In this document: piece after piece, positions 3,891-35,541 of the stretch
Layout of the letters: each line of letters opens with the position of its first letter
How positions within the stretch are numbered: the first letter of the stretch is position 1
Assembly: GCF_000143415.4 (NCBI RefSeq)
Contig: NW_003314306.1
Location: 900,897-964,896, forward strand
DNA length: 64,000 nt
DNA from: Selaginella moellendorffii
Taxonomy: Eukaryota; Plantae; Lycopodiophyta
Direction: 5' to 3'
Made by a program: the position numbers and the translations under genes
The notes under the pieces: generated by a model
The model's database searches: none
The model's input: the letters and a program-made list of their open reading frames with translations, nothing else
Told to the model about the DNA's origin: nothing

Positions 3891-4919
3891 CTATGGACTT
3901 GACCATATGCGTGTTCCAGAGTCCGTGATGTAAACACCCGCATGGCCACTGTCTTCCATAGCCAGCCCATATGTATACTTCAGCCCATAGCTGCTCGTCT
4001 TCTTACTCCACACCTCGCCTCGCGAGCCAATAATCACCAAAACTCCATACTCGTTGAGATGCAGGTAACATCCCGAGTCCCTCCCGGAGGTCTCCGTACC
4101 CCACACCCTCCGGTGCGTCTCCCTCACACGCACCACCAGCGCGCAGTCAGTCTCCATGGTGAGCACGAACACCAAGTTTGGAGACTCCAATCTATTTCCC
4201 TCCAACAGCGTCGATCCCAGATGTTCCCTGCCGCCAACCAGGGACGTGCCAAAGATCCAGCAGTGGTGCCCGTCAACGTCAATCCCGCGCGGGTCAATGA
4301 CCGTCTCGCCCGCATCAGCGGCTCCATCATCCAAGATTTTAGACTGTGGAAGATAAAGAAGTGTAAGATCAAGGGTGCCGCTGCCACCACCGGTACCTGG
4401 CTCGTCCTCAAAAGGAGTGTCTCGCAGCTCATACTCGATTCCAAAATAGCGGAGAACCAGGTTGACGTGGCCGTACCACATGTTCCCGTAGACAATTGGA
4501 TCCAAGTCCCGGATCGCGTCACGGATCTCCTCCAACATCGTCGTGATGCTCTGGATGAGCTCGCGGCCCCCGGCGCTGGTGCGGCTGGGCGCGACTGTGC
4601 AGATGTCACTGTTCTCCATGAAAGCTCGGTTGTACAGCCACAGCCTCACCCGCACAAACGCATTTTGGGTGTATTCCACGACGAAGGACATGCTCCGTCC
4701 TGTGCCGTAGCCAGCGTCAGGGTTCAGAGACCTCAGGTACTCTTCGATGCGGCTTATGATATCCAGGACGCGGGTGATAGCAAGATGGCCAAATCGCAGC
4801 CTGAACCTGAAGATTCCACGGAATGGAATCCCTGGTGGTGGCTGTGCAATGCAGGGACACGCAAGTGACATGAGTAGAGCAAGTGACACAAGGCTGGTTC
4901 TCATGATTGGCCTCAACAA
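3891..4919 (-). CDS. Secreted protein: signal peptide + ~200 aa unrecognised domain + C-terminal bulb-type (GNA/B-) lectin-like domain; intronless
   Basis: 342 aa ORF (first ATG likely MRTSLVSLALL); hydrophobic leader SLVSLALLMSLACPCIA; C-terminus STLLEGNRLESPNLVFVLTMETDCALVV...VWGTETSG...CYLHLNEYGVLVI...VWS...LAMEDSGHAGVY...IWSS has the three-repeat beta-prism II pattern. Confidence 0.78.
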   Translation of the reverse strand: MLRPIMRTSLVSLALLMSLACPCIAQPPPGIPFRGIFRFRLRFGHLAITRVLDIISRIEEYLRSLNPDAGYGTGRSMSFVVEYTQNAFVRVRLWLYNRAFMENSDICTVAPSRTSAGGRELIQSITTMLEEIRDAIRDLDPIVYGNMWYGHVNLVLRYFGIEYELRDTPFEDEPGTGGGSGTLDLTLLYLPQSKILDDGAADAGETVIDPRGIDVDGHHCWIFGTSLVGGREHLGSTLLEGNRLESPNLVFVLTMETDCALVVRVRETHRRVWGTETSGRDSGCYLHLNEYGVLVIIGSRGEVWSKKTSSYGLKYTYGLAMEDSGHAGVYITDSGTRIWSSP

Positions 4920-30100: not shown

Positions 30101-30863
30101 CCGGGTCGGGCTGTGTCCAGGAGTTCTCGTGGATGCCCTGATGGATCTGTTGGAGGTGATCAATCTCTCGTGGGAGATGTCTGAAAGCCAGGTCAGTTTC
30201 GAGGAGGCCGACTGCGACTACTAATACTACTACAGTTGTTGACAAAATGGTTCTCAAGTGTGTTACGAAAAGGCTCTGCAAAGATTGAAAATGGGTCTCC
30301 CTAGCGTTCGAGCGCGAATCGCCCACGTCCGCCCGCACAACAAATCTCGTGTCCAACTTCTGAGCAAGACTGCCATCTTTCAGGTGTAGATTGATCTCTT
30401 GAGCACTTTATTGGAGCGCGAAAACACATCACCTTTGTATTCCTGGAACAGTATCACAGGAACGTCGCCTGGGTCTCACGGGACGTCGTCTTGGTCTGTT
30501 GCTGTTTGAAACTGCGAATTTCTCCTGGGTTCTCAAATTGTCCTTGCTTGGATCTATAGCTGCTACTGCGTCACCATGGATCTGGGATCGAGCATTGTTG
30601 TGCAACACAACCCAAAAGTTGGTGGACGGCGTTGAAAAGCCTGGGCAAATGGCAACGGGGTGAAGAAGTAAACAAGAAAGAAGGGAATTATACTTATGGG
30701 CTGGCTATGGAAGACAGTGGCCGACTTTCGATCTACTAAGCACAGCTTGAATTAGTTGTTTGTTTGGAATGTATGGAACATTTATAATGCGAGGTGCGCG
30801 GGCTTTAACTTGATGAAGTTGGTTAACAATGTAAAGGAAGAGTAAAATAAAACGAACTCTCTT

Positions 30864-33542
30864 TCACCCAAGAAACTTGGCAAGCTCCATTCTTACCTCA
30901 TTCGCAGCGTCCGCCATCACCTTGCCATTGTTTATAGTCGTAGTCGTCCACTGGATATTGTCCTCGCTCTTCAAGAATCGCCCTCCTCTCGGGTACTGCA
31001 CTTGCTGCCACCCCATCGCGCTCCATTTGTCACACTGCTCCTCGATCCTCCTCCTCTTGAACCGAAAGTGCGCCGCGATCAAATCCTTGAACACCTCGTC
31101 CGGACTGCGCAGCGCCGGCGCCATGGAATGCATCATCGTGTTGAAGCACTGCTCGTAGTTGTAATTCTCGGACGCGTAGTGGCGGCTACCATCCTTGGGC
31201 CTGCTCTTCTCCCACCCGGGTTCGTTGTAGTAAGGCTCGCTCACGAACACCAGGCTTTGGAGCGACACGAGCAGCTGGAGCAGCGTCGAGGATCCCGGCT
31301 GCCACGATGGTCCGGTCCAAGTCCCCAGCAAGCTCAAGCACACCTTGCCACAGTGGTACAAGTTTGGATTGAATCGCACCTTGCCGCCGGCGGTGGTGAG
31401 GAACTGGACCGACGGAGGGGAGCTCGGGTAGCCATCGCCCACGAAGATGTCGAAGAGGAAGATCCCATTCTCGTATGGCGTGTCGTGGGGGCCGATGATG
31501 AGCGCGCGGAGGAGGTCCATCCGGAACTCGTCCACCCGGACGTGGATCGAGGAGTGGAACTCGAGCGGGAGCTGCGTGGCGAGGCCAGCCAGCTCCTTGG
31601 CGATGCGCCGGGACCGGCTGCCGTTGCCCAAGTCCGCGTCCCAGTGGATCGAGCTCCGGAAGTAGTGATTCTGGAGGAGCGCAGCGTGGCCGAACTGGAG
31701 TGGCTTGAGCGCCGTCACGTAGTCGAGCTCCTCGCTGAGTGGTTCGTCCATGGCGATCACTTGCTTGCCTTTGTCGTCGTGTCGCGGCGGTGGAGAGCTC
31801 TCCTTCTCGATCGTGATGCTGCTAGCGCCGGAGGAGGGCGACCCTGACGGAAGAGCGCCAGGGTGGCGGAGCTTGAAAACTTGGTCCGAGTCTTCCATCC
31901 ACGCTGCATGCCACGCGAGGCGCTGCCTCCACGCACTGATCCGCCGCTCCAGCCGCTCAAACGTGTCCTTTGCCTCGCCAAACAGCGCCGCCTCCACCGC
32001 GGAGTTCTCGTCGTCGTCCACCCCGCCAAGCATCGGCGTGCTCAGGAAGAACGAGGCCTGCGTGTGGAGCTTCGCGAAGCTGGCCATGAGCGACGCCGGA
32101 TGGAACAGTCCCTCGCTGCCGCTCCAGCAATCGTGGCTCGGATCCGACGCGCTGCCGCAAACCAGCGGGAGGAGCTCCGGAAGGCCGGCAACAGTCCGCA
32201 GCAGAGCAAAGAGCTCGAAGTGGAGCTCCGAGCGGGAGACGATGTCCAGCGCTGAATCGTTGCGGAGCAGCCAGCTGAGAACCTCGCGGGCGATAGAGTC
32301 ACGGCAGCACAGCAGCGCGGCTGCTGGCAGCGAGACCCGGCCGCCATTCTCCAGGCACGCCAGCTTGATCCCGTCCGAGAGCTTCCTCAACACCTCGACC
32401 ACTGCCTTGTCCGAGGCCTCGACATTCTTATCCACGGCCACTGCGCAAACCTCCTTGGAGCTCGCCGTCTCGGACTTCTTCGCCTTGAAAGCTCGCCGGA
32501 TCGACGAGCTCTTCTTCGTGTGGTTCTTCCTCGCCACCTTGACGCTCAAGCTCGAGTGATACACTGCCCGGAGCTCCTCCACCGTCGCAAAGATGGTCTC
32601 CATCTCCGCGTCCCACGAAAAGGTCGCCGCCGCCGCCGCCACCTTGAGCCGCTTCGCCGAATTCTCACCGGGGTTGAAAGCCGCCGAGGCGTCGCGCATC
32701 CTCGAGCACAGCCACTGGTCCACAAAGTCCACGGCCTCCTTGCCGGCGACAACTCTTAGATCCTGTCGGCTCAGGGGGAGCTGGCAGATCGGACACTCGA
32801 ATCCCGCAAAGCCGGACTGGAGCCTCTCCACACGGTCGCCGACGAGCCCGACCGCGCAATCCCGGCAAAAACCGTGCCCACATCCTTGGAGGGAGTAGCC
32901 GTCAACGCCGTCAACGCGGCACACCACGCAGTTGACCGGGGGCTTGACCGCTGGAGGAGCCGGGTCCTCCTCGATCATCGTCAAATCGATCGGATCAAAC
33001 GGGGCTCGGCACATAGAACACGCGCTGGAGGGCATCTCATTGATGAAAGTGCAAGCCGGGCAAGCTCTCTCGCTCGATCCCGATGATCCTTCTTCGCTGT
33101 TCTTGGGCTCGTTGTTGCGAATCTCCTGCTCGATCCGCGGCTCAAACCGGGCATTGCACATAGAACACGCCAGCGCTCCCATCTTGTTGGCGAAAGTGCA
33201 AACTGGGCATGGCTTCGATCCGGCGGCGCCGCTCGAGGCCCCAAACTCCGATCGACACATGCTACACTTGGCGGCCCTGGAGAAATTGAGATACGTGCAA
33301 ACCTCGCAAAGCTTGGAGCGGGCCTCCTTGCCCGATTCATCGTCACTGCCATCGATCACCACAACGTTATCCTGCGGAGGAGGAGGATGGGGAGGAGGAG
33401 CACCATAGCCAGGCCCAGGGGCTACAAATTCTACTTCATCTCCTCCACTGTCGTCCTCTTCCTCGTCTTCCTCGTCTTCCTCTTCTTCCTCTTCTCCTTG
33501 ACTGTAGTAGCCATCCCCCGTCTCGCCCCAGTCCACCTCCAT
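30864..33542 (-). CDS. Intronless 892 aa ubiquitin E2/E3 hybrid: acidic N-terminus, SIM-like motifs, 3 RanBP2/NZF zinc fingers, RING-HC, BIRC6-type UBC domain
   Basis: Three CxxCT(F/Y)xN-x6-CxMC fingers; CVVC..CGHGFCRDC..CPIC; GPHDTPYENG..FD..YPSSPP..VRFNPNLYHCGKVCLSLLGTW..EPYYNEPG with the catalytic Cys. Confidence 0.9.
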   Translation of the reverse strand: MEVDWGETGDGYYSQGEEEEEEDEEDEEEDDSGGDEVEFVAPGPGYGAPPPHPPPPQDNVVVIDGSDDESGKEARSKLCEVCTYLNFSRAAKCSMCRSEFGASSGAAGSKPCPVCTFANKMGALACSMCNARFEPRIEQEIRNNEPKNSEEGSSGSSERACPACTFINEMPSSACSMCRAPFDPIDLTMIEEDPAPPAVKPPVNCVVCRVDGVDGYSLQGCGHGFCRDCAVGLVGDRVERLQSGFAGFECPICQLPLSRQDLRVVAGKEAVDFVDQWLCSRMRDASAAFNPGENSAKRLKVAAAAATFSWDAEMETIFATVEELRAVYHSSLSVKVARKNHTKKSSSIRRAFKAKKSETASSKEVCAVAVDKNVEASDKAVVEVLRKLSDGIKLACLENGGRVSLPAAALLCCRDSIAREVLSWLLRNDSALDIVSRSELHFELFALLRTVAGLPELLPLVCGSASDPSHDCWSGSEGLFHPASLMASFAKLHTQASFFLSTPMLGGVDDDENSAVEAALFGEAKDTFERLERRISAWRQRLAWHAAWMEDSDQVFKLRHPGALPSGSPSSGASSITIEKESSPPPRHDDKGKQVIAMDEPLSEELDYVTALKPLQFGHAALLQNHYFRSSIHWDADLGNGSRSRRIAKELAGLATQLPLEFHSSIHVRVDEFRMDLLRALIIGPHDTPYENGIFLFDIFVGDGYPSSPPSVQFLTTAGGKVRFNPNLYHCGKVCLSLLGTWTGPSWQPGSSTLLQLLVSLQSLVFVSEPYYNEPGWEKSRPKDGSRHYASENYNYEQCFNTMMHSMAPALRSPDEVFKDLIAAHFRFKRRRIEEQCDKWSAMGWQQVQYPRGGRFLKSEDNIQWTTTTINNGKVMADAANEVRMELAKFLG

Positions 33543-33980
33543 GCCCGGAAAAAGCTTTGCCCTCGCCGGCGAGCGAATATTCTCCCTATCAAACCCTAGG
33601 CCTAGGGGAATATACCGGTCAATTTATCTATTTTAGGGCTGACATCAGCGATAGGATGCTGACCTTTGGTTGCTCGGGTTTTATTTTTTTGTTTGCTTTT
33701 TCCGCTTTCGCGCGTTTCCTGGATTTGAAAAAGCTCTGTTCTTGGTCGCGGATGATTAGGGCGGAGCGATGAGAGGGCGAGCTGTGATCGTCGGGAGATG
33801 GGTAGCAGCGGCGAGAGCCCGTGCCAGTTTATCGTCGAGCTCCTGAGCGAGAATGCGTACGATCTCATCTCCTGATCTAGAGAGGTTTTCACAGTTTCTC
33901 TTCCTTTTGCTCGTTTTCTCTAAATCAGTCCCAGTGACCGCGGTCATCGTCCCCCGCCCCCGCCTCTGCCATCGAATCTA

Positions 33981-35049
33981 ATGCTAGCGGCTTTCAATCC
34001 TGCTGCGCAAGCAGCAGCTCAAGCTCCGCCACCGCCTCCGCCGCCGCCATCGCCGCCCACCCTCACCGCCACACTGCTCTACAGCCGCGTGAGCAAGAAC
34101 ATCCTGTGCCTGGAGGCCGGCAAGGAGCTCGTGGACCTGGTGGTGGGCTTCCTCACGCTGCCGCTGGGATGCGTCGTCAAGCTCCTCCAGGCGATCGAGA
34201 TCCCGCCACCCGAGGGAGCGCCGCCGCCGCCGATCTCCAGCAAGCGCGAGGTGAAGCCGCTGGTGGGGATCACGAGCCTGTTCTCGTGCACCGAGAAGCT
34301 GGATGAATCGAGGATGTGTTCCAGCAAGAGCTTGCTGGTGGATCCTCGCCCAACCATGACCTTTGGAGACAAAGTGATCCGGATCCCCGGGACCGAGGGA
34401 GCGGCGATCTACTGCTGCGGCGCCCCGGCGGCGTGCGAGTTCATCACCAAGAAACCGGATCTAAAGTGTCCCAAGCACAAGAAGGTGATGGAGAACCCGT
34501 GCAAAGTCTTGGCGAGCGAGGAGGATGTGATCGCCGCCGCCGCTGCCGCCGCTGGGGGTGGCAAGAAGGAGGAAGCGGCTCCAAAGAAAGGGAAGAAAGG
34601 CGGGGCCCCGGCAGTGGAGGCTGCGCCGCCTCCCGGGTATATCAAAACCGGATCGAGTTTCATGATCACCAACACGCTCGAGGTTTTCCCGAGCTCCACC
34701 ATCCAATCCATCTTGCGACTGGGGACGCAAAAGGGCGAGAAGATGAGCGATCTGGAGAGCATGGAGATTCCAGTGTCGGGCGAGGAGGTAAGCTTTGATC
34801 TTTGGTTTCATGCTGATGATCGCTGGATCGATTTGTCACAGATTGTCCAGATGCTAAAGTCGTCGCTTTCTTCCACCAATGTGCTCAACGATGTGTTTGG
34901 CAAGCATTGCAAGAAACGTAAGCGCGAGAAATCTCTCCACCACATTCTTGTTCTTGATGTTCTTCCTCTCGTTTCTTGTGATCCCAGCGCTAGCTTCACC
35001 GATGATGCTTCTCCCGGCACCACCATCGGCCGGAGCTCTCCCCGCGTAG
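33981..35049 (+). CDS. DUF674 family protein (2 short 3' introns; start uncertain)
   Basis: LLYSRVSKNILCLEAGKELVDLVVGFLTLPLGCVVKLL, GYIKTGSSFMITNTLEVFP, LKSSLSSTNVLNDVF. Confidence 0.8.
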
Positions 35050-35541
35050 AGATCAAACGCAGGAAGAAAAGGAGAGAGTGATTTAGAGCGTGGATTGGAT
35101 GATCTTCCGGGAAGAACACAATGTTTGAGATTTATGGCCTAGTGAGGAAGAAAGGCGTTTTAAAAGCTTGCATGGACTGCCACGTAGCAAACCTCGCCAT
35201 GGCCATGGGCATGAATGGGCATGGCCATGCATAGTGCCATTCAACGAGAGGGCGGGAAAAAAATCGCTAGGGGAGGCGTTGTTCCAATTACAATAAATTT
35301 GGTTTCCACAAAATAGCGAAGATGGTTCTTTAGGTTTTGTGGCGCTGCCCTAATTCGTCCGGTCTGGAGCTCGAGCGCGGCGCCGTGGCAAGGTAGAGCG
35401 ATTTCTCTCGCAATCTTGTGGAATGTAGATTCGGAGCTCTCGGCCGGCAGCGCGAGCGATCGAAAATGCGGGGGGATTGGCGATGGAGCGGCGCCACCGA
35501 GTGACGGATTCTTCGCCGCCGGAGGGAGCCGCGGGCGCGAT

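What the first reader, a model, noticed from the sequence alone, without database searches (positions are those of the whole stretch)
30864..33542. Single-chain SUMO/ubiquitin reader + RING + BIRC6-type E2: candidate self-contained ubiquitin ligase in a plant
Seen: one ORF carrying an acidic tract, a SIM-like motif (VVVIDGSDDE), three NZF fingers with the T-F/Y...M signature (CEVCTYLN..CSMC, CPVCTFAN..CSMC, CPACTFIN..CSMC), a second SIM-like motif (PIDLTMIEED), a C3HC4 RING resembling RBR RING1 but with no IBR/RING2, and a UBC domain with its catalytic Cys. Established: TF/TY-type NZFs (Npl4, TAB2) bind ubiquitin; (V/I)DLT and VVVID+acidic motifs are typical SIMs. From recall, the C-terminal half (WLLRNDSALDI, YVTALKPLQF, LPLEFHSSIHVRVDEFRMD, TTAGGKVRFNPNLY) resembles BIRC6/BRUCE rather than angiosperm UBC23-26, yet no BIR domain is present. 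Inference: an E2-E3 chimera that reads SUMO or mixed SUMO-Ub chains and ubiquitinates with its own E2 (a one-protein STUbL or chain elongator). I do not recognise this architecture. Caveat: the fingers lack the usual Trp before the first Cys.
Basis: partly seen in the sequence, partly recalled or inferred. Interest (0 to 1): 0.85.

Follow-up and report, generated by a model that had tools for sequence, protein, structure and literature searches.

The report
Mini-BIRC6 enzyme with RING and ubiquitin readers
This clubmoss gene is real and expressed, and it encodes one protein that joins three ubiquitin-binding zinc fingers and an RBR-type RING domain to the catalytic end of the giant enzyme BIRC6; it belongs to an old, widespread and apparently unstudied family, so it is not a one-off invention.

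Summary
Window 30864-33542 (minus strand) of Selaginella moellendorffii is an intronless 892-aa ORF. Contigs from four studies cover it as one unspliced unit.

Its order of parts is:
- an acidic tract and a SIM-like motif;
- three NZF-type fingers with the T-F/Y...Met signature;
- a second SIM-like motif;
- a RING;
- a helical region;
- a UBC domain with catalytic Cys735.

The back 600 residues match the C-terminal arm plus UBC of BIRC6 (UBC Z 33.7, arm Z 16.8). In a relative, the family's RING folds like an RBR RING1 (Z 7-10, against 4-5 for ordinary RINGs). The UBC does not group with angiosperm-type large E2s (AU p 0.0024).

The architecture is not unique. RING-arm-UBC proteins occur in ferns, another lycophyte, a liverwort, gymnosperms, green, red and brown algae and an amoebozoan. 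Many carry NZFs and a conserved N-terminal SIM-like motif (14 of 25, against 2.2 expected). Most relatives also have an IBR-like block that Selaginella has lost.

I found no paper describing the family. Reading of ubiquitin or SUMO and self-sufficient ligase activity remain inference. The scan also noted a same-length copy on another piece of this genome.

The parts
30864..33542 (-). Complete intronless coding sequence, 892 codons plus stop
   Evidence: ORF list. Annotated as exactly this product in GCA_000143415.2.
30745..33585 (-). Approximate extent of transcript contigs, with short UTRs and no splice joints
   Evidence: Contigs of 2.7-2.8 kb from four studies lie collinear on it. The flanks and the DUF674 neighbour are uncovered. 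The strand is taken from the ORF; contigs cannot show it.
33432..33500 (-). Acidic Glu/Asp tract (residues 15-37) in a low-confidence, probably disordered N-terminus
   Evidence: Sequence; pLDDT below 50 over residues 1-72.
33333..33365 (-). SIM-like motif 1 (residues 60-70): a hydrophobic core VVVI followed by an acidic/Ser run
   Evidence: A like motif lies upstream of the RING in 14 of 25 family members, against 2.2 expected from shuffles.
33255..33308 (-). NZF-type zinc finger 1 (residues 79-96), T-Y...Met
   Evidence: Motif. Pfam RanBP is the top hit at 21.4 bits, below the cut-off of 27. It aligns to TRABID NZF1.
33156..33209 (-). NZF-type zinc finger 2 (residues 112-129), T-F...Met
   Evidence: Pfam RanBP 16.4 bits. 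It aligns to the YAF2 NZF.
33009..33062 (-). NZF-type zinc finger 3 (residues 161-178), T-F...Met
   Evidence: Pfam RanBP 20.7 bits. It aligns to the HOIL-1L, HOIP, NPL4 and TAB2 NZFs.
32964..32993 (-). SIM-like motif 2 (residues 184-193, PIDLTMIEED), directly before the RING
   Evidence: Some green-lineage relatives have a hydrophobic-then-acidic motif at the same place. This motif is weaker than motif 1 and did not pass my stricter pattern.
32682..32933 (-). C3HC4 RING (205-253) plus the conserved trailing helix LSRxDLRxVxG...DxWL (to about 287); RBR-RING1-like
   Evidence: Family RING HMM E 1.8e-22; pLDDT about 88-92. The homologous module of P0008 matches RBR RING1 domains at Z 7.4-10.3 and RBR ligases in Foldseek.
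31863..32663 (-). Helical region (about residues 294-560) equivalent to the BIRC6 C-terminal arm, including the LLRNDSxxDI motif
   Evidence: VIA-align Z 16.8, 15.2 and 13.1 to BIRC6 residues 4159-4499. Weak sequence match to BIRC6 4357-4422. The region is present in 102 of 166 fetched relatives.
30867..31748 (-). Extended BIRC6-type UBC module (residues 599-892)
   Evidence: PDB phmmer E 6e-62. VIA-align Z 33.7, rmsd 2.0 A, 272 residues, 41% identity to 3ceg. Foldseek TM 0.87.
31338..31340 (-). Codon of the catalytic Cys735, in FNPNLYHCGKVCLSLL
   Evidence: Invariant in 13-sequence and 58-sequence family alignments, together with N725, P726 and N727. It aligns with the Cys of the BIRC6 GKVCLS motif, which PMC12999496 numbers C4666; this equivalence is my inference from the alignment.

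Best explanation
This is a functional, expressed Selaginella gene. It encodes a member of an old eukaryotic family of single-chain E2/E3 hybrid enzymes. The catalytic back end (residues 294-892) is homologous to the last ~700 residues of BIRC6, that is, the helical C-terminal arm plus the extended UBC domain with Cys735. In place of BIRC6's giant BIR-bearing scaffold, the front end carries an RBR-type RING1 domain and, on a flexible N-terminal tail, three NZF ubiquitin-binding fingers and one or two SIM-like motifs.

Most likely mechanism (inferred): an E1 charges Cys735 directly, as it does for BIRC6. The tail then captures proteins that already carry ubiquitin, and possibly SUMO. The enzyme adds or extends ubiquitin on them, so it acts as an E1-only, modification-directed ligase or chain extender. 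The RING1-like domain either positions the protein's own UBC~Ub or recruits a second E2; which of the two cannot be decided here. Selaginella has secondarily lost the IBR-like zinc block that most relatives keep between the RING and the arm.
For: Shown here:
- One ORF and one annotated gene.
- Collinear unspliced contigs from four studies, with silent flanks.
- The contig variants cause no frame break, and all three inside the Pfam UBC core (646-775) are synonymous.
- UBC matches BIRC6 at E 6e-62 and Z 33.7, above UBE2O (about 25) and UBE2Z (22.5).
- The arm matches BIRC6 4159-4499 at Z 16.8.
- NPN and Cys735 are invariant in 58 relatives.
- Family members with the same order of modules occur in Adiantum, Ceratopteris, Diphasiastrum, Riccia, Ginkgo, Taxus, Chlorokybus, Mesostigma, Myrmecia, Hildenbrandia, Ectocarpus and Vexillifera.
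- The careful tree places the protein in a streptophyte clade that follows plant phylogeny.
- The RING module folds like an RBR RING1.
- Pfam IBR is touched by 4 of 10 relatives.
- The fingers' nearest solved relatives are ubiquitin-binding NZFs.
- The SIM-like motif is enriched: 14 of 25 against 2.2 expected.
- The full-length model has pTM 0.73, with confident RING, arm and UBC.

Precedent: E1 charges the BIRC6 UBC directly, UBA6 in humans and dUBA1 in fly (PMC12999496; PDB entry title 9qgg).
Against: - No biochemical evidence for thioester formation, ubiquitin or SUMO binding, or ligase activity.
- The fingers fall below Pfam's RanBP cut-off and lack the usual Trp. Finger 1 is poorly modelled.
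- The RING1-like fold was shown on relative P0008, not on the Selaginella RING itself.
- The sequence profile of the RING module finds only generic RINGs.
- RBR RING1 domains do not normally activate E2~Ub for direct discharge (established knowledge), so a simple 'RING activates own E2' model may be wrong.
- SIM-like motifs are short, and the family members are related, so the enrichment is not a count of independent events.
- The runs are only guessed to be RNA.
Confidence: 0.7

Rival explanations
1. RBR-like relay. The RING1 (with the IBR in relatives) recruits a separate, ordinary E2~Ub. Ubiquitin then passes by transthiolation to Cys735 of the UBC domain, which stands where RING2/Rcat stands in RBR ligases. 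On this reading the protein is an RBR analogue and not an E1-charged E2.
For: The RING module is RBR-RING1-like, and RBR ligases dominate both structure searches. Relatives keep an IBR-like block in the RBR position, and 4 of 10 touch Pfam IBR. The order NZF then RING1 is that of HOIL-1L, which is hit by both the fingers and the RING.
Against: The closest solved UBC, BIRC6's, is charged directly by E1. E2-to-E2 transthiolation has no established precedent (my knowledge). Selaginella has lost the IBR-like block. A helical arm of about 270 residues lies between the RING and the UBC.
Confidence: 0.15
2. It is an ordinary member of the plant large-E2 group (UBC23-26, the PHO2 family) that happens to have extra N-terminal zinc fingers.
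For: The Arabidopsis halleri protein P0014, with an SDHHY lead-in, is a top-20 hit at 48% identity. Arabidopsis UBC23-26 are large E2s (PMC4641371).
Against: The SDHHY group lies outside a 100/97 branch that holds this protein together with BIRC6. The AU test rejects their union (p 0.0024). No UBE2O-type SH3 domains are present. The high total scores of the SDHHY proteins come from two UBC stretches each. That this group equals UBC23-26 rests on my recall of the motif, not on a named record.
Confidence: 0.04
3. The fingers are RanBP2-type fingers of the RNA-binding or Ran-binding kind and the SIM-like motifs are only acidic linkers, so the N-terminal tail targets something other than ubiquitin or SUMO.
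For: The fingers score below the Pfam cut-off and lack the Trp. Nup153 and ZRANB2 fingers also appear among the weak matches.
Against: All three fingers have the T-F/Y...Met pattern of the NPL4, TAB2 and HOIL-1L NZFs (the role of these residues in ubiquitin binding is established knowledge). The best solved matches are ubiquitin-binding NZFs. Algal orthologues keep the Trp, so the fingers descend from canonical NZFs.
Confidence: 0.1
4. It is a gene-model artefact: two neighbouring genes or a pseudogene read through as one ORF.
For: None beyond the unusual domain combination.
Against: The ORF is uninterrupted. Single collinear contigs from four studies cover it. Orthologues in a dozen lineages share the same module order. 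The full-length fold is confident.
Confidence: 0.01

Closest known systems
BIRC6 / BRUCE / Apollon (animal giant E2/E3 hybrid)
   Same: The extended UBC module matches (41% identity, Z 33.7, rmsd 2.0 A). The helical arm directly before it also matches (Z 16.8), with the shared LRNDS-type motif and the QF...HY lead-in. True BIRC6 (P0110, which has a BIR domain) sits in the same major UBC clade.
   Different: There is no BIR domain and none of the ~4,000-residue scaffold. The front end is SIM-like motif, NZF x3 and RING1 instead. BIRC6 branches deeper than the red and green algal RING-bearing clade.
HOIL-1L (RBCK1) and HOIP (RNF31), the NZF-bearing RBR ligases
   Same: They have the same front-half order, ubiquitin-binding NZF(s) followed by an RBR RING1. 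HOIL-1L is hit by both the fingers and the RING module (Z 8.9; Foldseek probability 1.00).
   Different: This protein has no RING2/Rcat, and in Selaginella no IBR either. The catalytic Cys sits in a UBC fold.
UBE2O and angiosperm UBC23-26 (PHO2 family)
   Same: They are large E2s with an extended UBC of the same superclass (UBE2O Z about 25).
   Different: They carry UBE2O-type SH3 domains and no RING or NZF. The angiosperm-type UBC lies outside the clade.
SUMO-targeted ubiquitin ligases (RNF4, Arkadia)
   Same: SIM-like hydrophobic-acidic motifs lie N-terminal to a RING, and the motif is conserved across the family.
   Different: Only one strong SIM-like motif and one weaker one, not a tandem cluster. 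The RING is RING1-like and not an RNF4-type dimeric RING. The protein carries its own E2. SUMO binding is untested.
Giant-virus UBC+RING fusion proteins (ESM Atlas cluster, about 358 aa, Nucleocytoviricota)
   Same: They are natural single-chain UBC plus C3HC4 RING proteins, and the UBC part is a structural neighbour (TM by that row 0.55).
   Different: They are much smaller, lack the arm and the NZFs, and the relation of their RING to this one was not examined.

Membership tests
E2 / UBC superfamily | UBC fold | tested here: met
   Pfam UQ_con E 2e-21. Model region 599-892 has pLDDT above 90 and matches E2 structures.
E2 / UBC superfamily | Catalytic Cys and the (H/N)PN motif upstream of it | tested here: met
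   N725-P726-N727 and C735 are invariant in alignments A1 and A3.
E2 / UBC superfamily | Forms a ubiquitin thioester with E1 | not testable with these tools
   Needs a biochemical assay.
BIRC6 / BRUCE | BIRC6-type extended UBC module | tested here: met
   E 6e-62. Z 33.7 against about 25 for UBE2O and 22.5 for UBE2Z.
BIRC6 / BRUCE | Helical C-terminal arm preceding the UBC | tested here: met
   Residues 294-542 match BIRC6 4159-4499 at Z 16.8, rmsd 2.7 A, 166 residues. A weak sequence match supports it.
BIRC6 / BRUCE | BIR domain and giant N-terminal scaffold | tested here: not met
   No BIR hit and the protein is only 892 aa. The control P0110 does show a BIR domain.
RBR ligases | RING1 of the RBR type (RING with a long second loop and a trailing helix) | tested here: met
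   Shown on the homologous module of P0008: the eleven best matches are all RBR RING1 domains at Z 6.5-10.3, against 4-5 for ordinary RINGs, and RBR ligases dominate Foldseek. The Selaginella RING matches the family RING HMM at E 1.8e-22 but was not folded alone.
RBR ligases | IBR domain | tested here: not met
   Selaginella has a gap where relatives carry a C-P-x-C ... C-x2-C-x4-C-x2-C ... H-x-C block. In relatives the block is only IBR-like: Pfam IBR is hit by 4 of 10, best E 8.5e-4.
RBR ligases | RING2 / Rcat with a catalytic Cys | tested here: not met
   No further zinc domain is present. A helical arm and a UBC follow the RING.
NZF (ubiquitin-binding RanBP2-type zinc finger) | C-x2-C-x10-C-x2-C scaffold with Asn at the conserved position | tested here: met
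   Three fingers at 79-96, 112-129 and 161-178.
NZF (ubiquitin-binding RanBP2-type zinc finger) | T-F/Y dipeptide and a hydrophobic residue between the last two Cys (the ubiquitin contact of NPL4 and TAB2) | tested here: met
   TY...M, TF...M and TF...M. The fingers align to TRABID, HOIL-1L, NPL4 and TAB2 NZFs. The role of these residues is established knowledge.
NZF (ubiquitin-binding RanBP2-type zinc finger) | Pfam PF00641 at the gathering score, and a Trp before the first Cys | tested here: not met
   16-21 bits per finger against a cut-off of 27. There is no Trp, but algal orthologues have it.
NZF (ubiquitin-binding RanBP2-type zinc finger) | Binds ubiquitin | not testable with these tools
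   Needs a pull-down, NMR or ITC experiment.
SUMO-targeted ubiquitin ligase (STUbL) | SUMO-interacting motifs | tested here: inconclusive
   One strong SIM-like motif at residue 60, conserved in 14 of 25 relatives against 2.2 expected, and one weaker motif at 184-193. There is no tandem cluster, and binding is untested.
Angiosperm UBC23-26 (PHO2 family) | UBC groups with that clade; UBE2O-type SH3 domains | tested here: not met
   The group is excluded by a 100/97 branch and by the AU test, p 0.0024. No PF23043, PF23044 or PF23046 hit. Caveat: the angiosperm group was recognised from an Arabidopsis halleri record and a recalled motif.

The most novel reading that the evidence does not exclude
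RING1(-IBR)-arm-UBC proteins form a distinct, ancient class of ubiquitin ligase. In this class an RBR-type RING1 works with a BIRC6-type UBC cysteine in the same chain, either as an E2-to-UBC relay that mimics RBR chemistry or as a RING-assisted E2. The N-terminal NZF and SIM readers would make it a one-protein ligase, needing only E1, that targets ubiquitylated and SUMOylated proteins. It would have been retained in non-flowering plants and algae and lost in flowering plants.
Probability: 0.2. Interest if true: 0.85.

Novelty: new variant of a known kind. Interest (0 to 1): 0.6.

Why it matters
BIRC6 and UBE2O show that a UBC domain inside a large protein can act as E2 and E3 at once, but both are very large and hard to dissect. 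This family offers the same catalytic arm plus UBC in proteins of about 750-1,100 residues, joined to recognisable reader modules (NZF, SIM-like) and to an RBR-type RING1. That combination raises a concrete mechanistic question: what does a RING1 do next to a built-in E2? It also shows that the BIRC6 catalytic module predates animals. The module is shared with red, green and brown algae and with Amoebozoa. Non-flowering plants keep two paralogous lines, and neither is in the Arabidopsis E2 catalogue read. The family is tractable for in vitro work and for genetics in model ferns, liverworts or algae.

Tried and rejected
- The three word-indexed homology searches (full protein, residues 66-300, family profile A1) gave nothing useful. 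Low-complexity words filled the 8,000-candidate limit. The family was found only through the exhaustive representative search.
- NCBIfam had no hit.
- A sequence profile of the RING plus Cys-rich module against the PDB returned only generic RINGs, with HOIL-1 at E 0.003 among many TRIM, RNF4 and TRAF6 RINGs. RBR ancestry is therefore not shown by sequence; only the fold searches separated RBR RING1 domains from the rest.
- Literature searches for a described RING+UBC or RBR-like+UBC natural fusion found nothing relevant: Selaginella E2, UBC23-26/BRUCE, PHO2/BIRC6 phylogeny, RBR+UBC+BIRC6, 'RING-UBC'.
- The Burroughs et al. 2008 E2 survey, the paper most likely to mention such architectures, is not held.
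- I could not examine RING-UBC contacts, because model coordinates and PAE are not returned.
- The organisms of several close relatives (P0006, P0008, P0009, P0015, all Logan transcripts) remain unknown, so absence from angiosperms is not demonstrated.
- Rejected after testing: the gene-fusion artefact, and membership of the UBC23-26 group.
Full report
**Observation.** Window 30864-33542 holds a single 892-codon ORF on the minus strand. The window is part of scaffold GL377610.1 of assembly GCA_000143415.2, where a gene with exactly this 892-aa product is called; I know this assembly as Selaginella moellendorffii. Its neighbours are a DUF674 gene and a gene with a PUB62/63 C-terminal domain.
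- an acidic tract at residues 15-37;
- VVVIDGSDDE at residue 60;
- three C-x2-C-x10-C-x2-C fingers at 79-96, 112-129 and 161-178, each with T-Y or T-F after the second Cys and Met between the last two;
- PIDLTMIEED at 184-193;
- a C3HC4 RING at 205-253;
- a UBC core with N725-P726-N727 and Cys735.

Pfam confirms UQ_con (E 2e-21). The RING and RanBP zinc-finger hits are the best of their kind but all lie below the curated cut-offs, both for the whole protein and for each finger taken alone.

**Is it one expressed gene?** Contigs of 2.7-2.8 kb from four different studies lie collinear on 30745/30837 to 33565/33585. They show no joints and no indels. They stop within about 25-120 bases of the ORF ends. 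The intergenic DNA on both sides and the whole DUF674 gene have no cover. That pattern is what transcripts give, although the runs are only guessed to be RNA and contigs cannot show the strand. The 13 variant positions in these contigs are 6 synonymous and 7 non-synonymous. None breaks the frame, and all three that fall inside the Pfam UBC core (646-775) are synonymous. The refuting condition that 'transcripts splice the halves into separate genes' is not met.

**The back half is BIRC6-like.**
- By sequence, residues 618-856 match the BIRC6 UBC at E 6e-62 and Drosophila BRUCE at 3.5e-55, against 4e-39 for UBE2O and 4e-36 for UBE2Z. A weak second stretch (404-469, with the LRNDS motif) matches BIRC6 4357-4422.
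- A full-length AlphaFold model built on 58 relatives has pTM 0.73. The RING (pLDDT about 88-92), the helical region (83-97) and the UBC (mostly above 90) are confident. Residues 1-200 are mostly low-confidence.
- By structure, residues 599-892 match the BIRC6 UBC at Z 33.7 (rmsd 2.0 A, 272 residues, 41% identity). UBE2O scores about 25 and UBE2Z 22.5.
- Residues 294-542 match BIRC6 4159-4499 at Z 16.8, 15.2 and 13.1 in three entries. That is the C-terminal arm directly before BIRC6's own UBC.

Residues 294-892 therefore correspond to the last ~700 residues of BIRC6. There is no BIR domain.

**It is not a Selaginella oddity.** The exhaustive search of 1.84 billion representatives found 2,007 proteins at E below 1e-30. 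Local HMMs built from a family alignment show the helical arm in 102 of the 166 proteins fetched, and the RING module upstream of arm plus UBC in 39. Named members are:
- ferns: Adiantum (P0007, four fingers plus RING; P0018, one TF finger plus RING) and Ceratopteris (P0162);
- another lycophyte, Diphasiastrum (P0164), and the liverwort Riccia (P0017);
- gymnosperms: Ginkgo (P0044) and Taxus (P0019, partial);
- green algae: Chlorokybus (P0011), Mesostigma (P0020, P0042) and the chlorophyte Myrmecia bisecta (P0016);
- the red alga Hildenbrandia (P0059), the brown alga Ectocarpus (P0116) and the amoebozoan Vexillifera (P0166).

All of these share a conserved LSRxDLRxVxG...DxWL helix after the RING. 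The algal fingers keep the Trp that Selaginella and the ferns lack, so the Selaginella fingers descend from canonical NZFs. Source records call these proteins 'hypothetical' or 'UBC core domain-containing'.

**The RING is of the RBR RING1 kind.** Most relatives carry, between the RING helix and the arm, a further block C-P-x-C ... C-x2-C-x4-C-x2-C-G ... H-x-C. Selaginella has a gap there.
- A sequence profile of the RING plus this block finds only generic RINGs in the PDB.
- A model of the module from P0008 (pLDDT 78) gives RBR ligases as nearly all the best Foldseek matches: RNF216 at E 3.4e-4, HOIL-1L, ARIH1, ARIH2, parkin, HOIP and RNF144A.
- An independent all-against-all aligner ranks eleven RBR RING1 domains first (RNF144A Z 10.3, rmsd 2.5 A over 91 residues; HOIL-1L 8.9; ARIH2 8.8; HOIP 7.8; parkin 7.4). 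Ordinary RINGs follow at Z 4-5 over about 55 residues.
- Pfam's IBR model is touched by 4 of 10 relatives, best E 8.5e-4.

The family as a whole looks like RING1 and an IBR-like block joined to a BIRC6 arm and UBC. The IBR assignment stays tentative, and the Selaginella RING itself was not folded alone.

**Reader modules.** The three-finger region finds almost only ubiquitin-binding NZFs among solved structures: YAF2, TRABID NZF1, HOIL-1L, HOIP, NPL4, TAB2 and RYBP. The E-values are weak (0.001 to 0.5), as expected for 25-residue domains. The ESM Atlas's own structural neighbours of residues 60-300 are proteins rich in RanBP-type fingers. All three fingers have the T-F/Y...Met pattern that, by established knowledge of NPL4 and TAB2, contacts ubiquitin's Ile44 patch. 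A SIM-like motif (a hydrophobic core followed by an acidic/Ser run) lies upstream of the RING in 14 of 25 family members that have an N-terminal extension. Composition-matched shuffles give 2.2. The red and brown algal members are among the 14. The members are related, so this is conservation and not a count of independent events. It does argue that the motif is under selection in otherwise unalignable tails. The second motif (184-193) is weaker.

**Phylogeny.** A careful IQ-TREE analysis of 67 UBC modules gives this order:
1. Selaginella sits in a clade with P0006, P0008 and the ferns (support 97/86).
2. That clade is sister (99/94) to a second land-plant clade of Riccia, Diphasiastrum, Ginkgo and Taxus, so there are two old plant paralogues.
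3. Chlorokybus comes next (95/81), then other green algae, then a red-algal clade.
4. True BIRC6 (P0110, BIR domain confirmed) branches deeper.

An angiosperm-type group, recognised by an Arabidopsis halleri record and an SDHHY lead-in that I recall from UBC23-26, lies outside a 100/97 branch. The AU test rejects joining Selaginella to it (delta lnL 39.1, p 0.0024). The root rests on one long UBE2O-like branch, which is a caveat. The Arabidopsis E2 catalogue lists UBC23-26 as its only large E2s (PMC4641371). Loss of the family in flowering plants is therefore likely but not shown.

**Mechanism.** Three things are shown: a catalytically complete BIRC6-type UBC, its BIRC6-type arm, and an RBR-type RING1 with NZF-type fingers in one expressed chain. 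The rest is inferred. An E1 charges Cys735 directly, as UBA6 does for human BIRC6 (PMC12999496) and dUBA1 for fly BIRC6 (PDB entry 9qgg). The flexible tail captures ubiquitylated, and perhaps SUMOylated, proteins, and the enzyme extends the modification. The role of the RING1 is open. By established knowledge, RBR RING1 domains hold E2~Ub in an open state and hand ubiquitin to a catalytic Cys. That makes an RBR-like relay onto Cys735 a real but unprecedented alternative.

**Novelty.** I found no paper describing this family, and the most relevant survey is not held. Single-chain UBC+RING proteins do exist elsewhere, for example in a giant-virus cluster in the ESM Atlas. I rate this a new variant of a known kind (the E2/E3 hybrid enzymes of the BIRC6/UBE2O class). 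It is interesting mainly as a compact model for BIRC6-type catalysis and for the RING1-next-to-E2 question. The scan also noted a copy of the same length on another piece of this genome, probably the second haplotype; I did not examine it.

Noticed in passing
window about 35324 onward (L001:1-1001): The next gene beyond DUF674 carries a PUB62/63 C-terminal domain (PF23112), so a U-box ubiquitin ligase lies two genes away. Contigs from three of the four runs start at 35324-35359.
   Followed up: no
window 33981-35081 (+): A DUF674 gene (Pfam E 9e-15), head to head with the E2 gene, has no contig in any of the four runs laid. It served as an internal silent control.
   Followed up: partly
P0164:255-381, P0017:205-328 (relatives, not the window): The IBR-like block of relatives holds a helical insert of about 40-60 residues. 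In single members it weakly hits the SAP and HeH/LEM Pfam models (E 0.03-0.15). A SAP-like motif next to SIM-like motifs would recall PIAS SUMO ligases. The insert is absent in Selaginella.
   Followed up: no
ESM Atlas clusters: Giant viruses (Nucleocytoviricota) have a 411-member cluster of proteins of about 770 aa that structurally match residues 288-888 (TM 0.53). They also have an 83-member cluster of UBC + C3HC4 RING fusions of about 358 aa.
   Followed up: no
P0124, P0132, P0114 (relatives): Proteins of 2,000-3,700 aa carry the same arm plus UBC preceded by ZZ, SPRY and F5/8-type-C domains and no BIR. They are another, different giant scaffold built on the BIRC6-type catalytic end.
   Followed up: partly
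P0014, P0025, P0035, P0128 (relatives): The angiosperm-type SDHHY E2 records each contain two UBC stretches. They are tandem genes merged in annotation, or true double-UBC proteins.
   Followed up: no
P0010 and its cluster (relatives): A 1,098-aa protein with three UQ_con stretches plus RWD and UEV matches forms a separate, strongly supported clade next to the BIRC6-like group.
   Followed up: no
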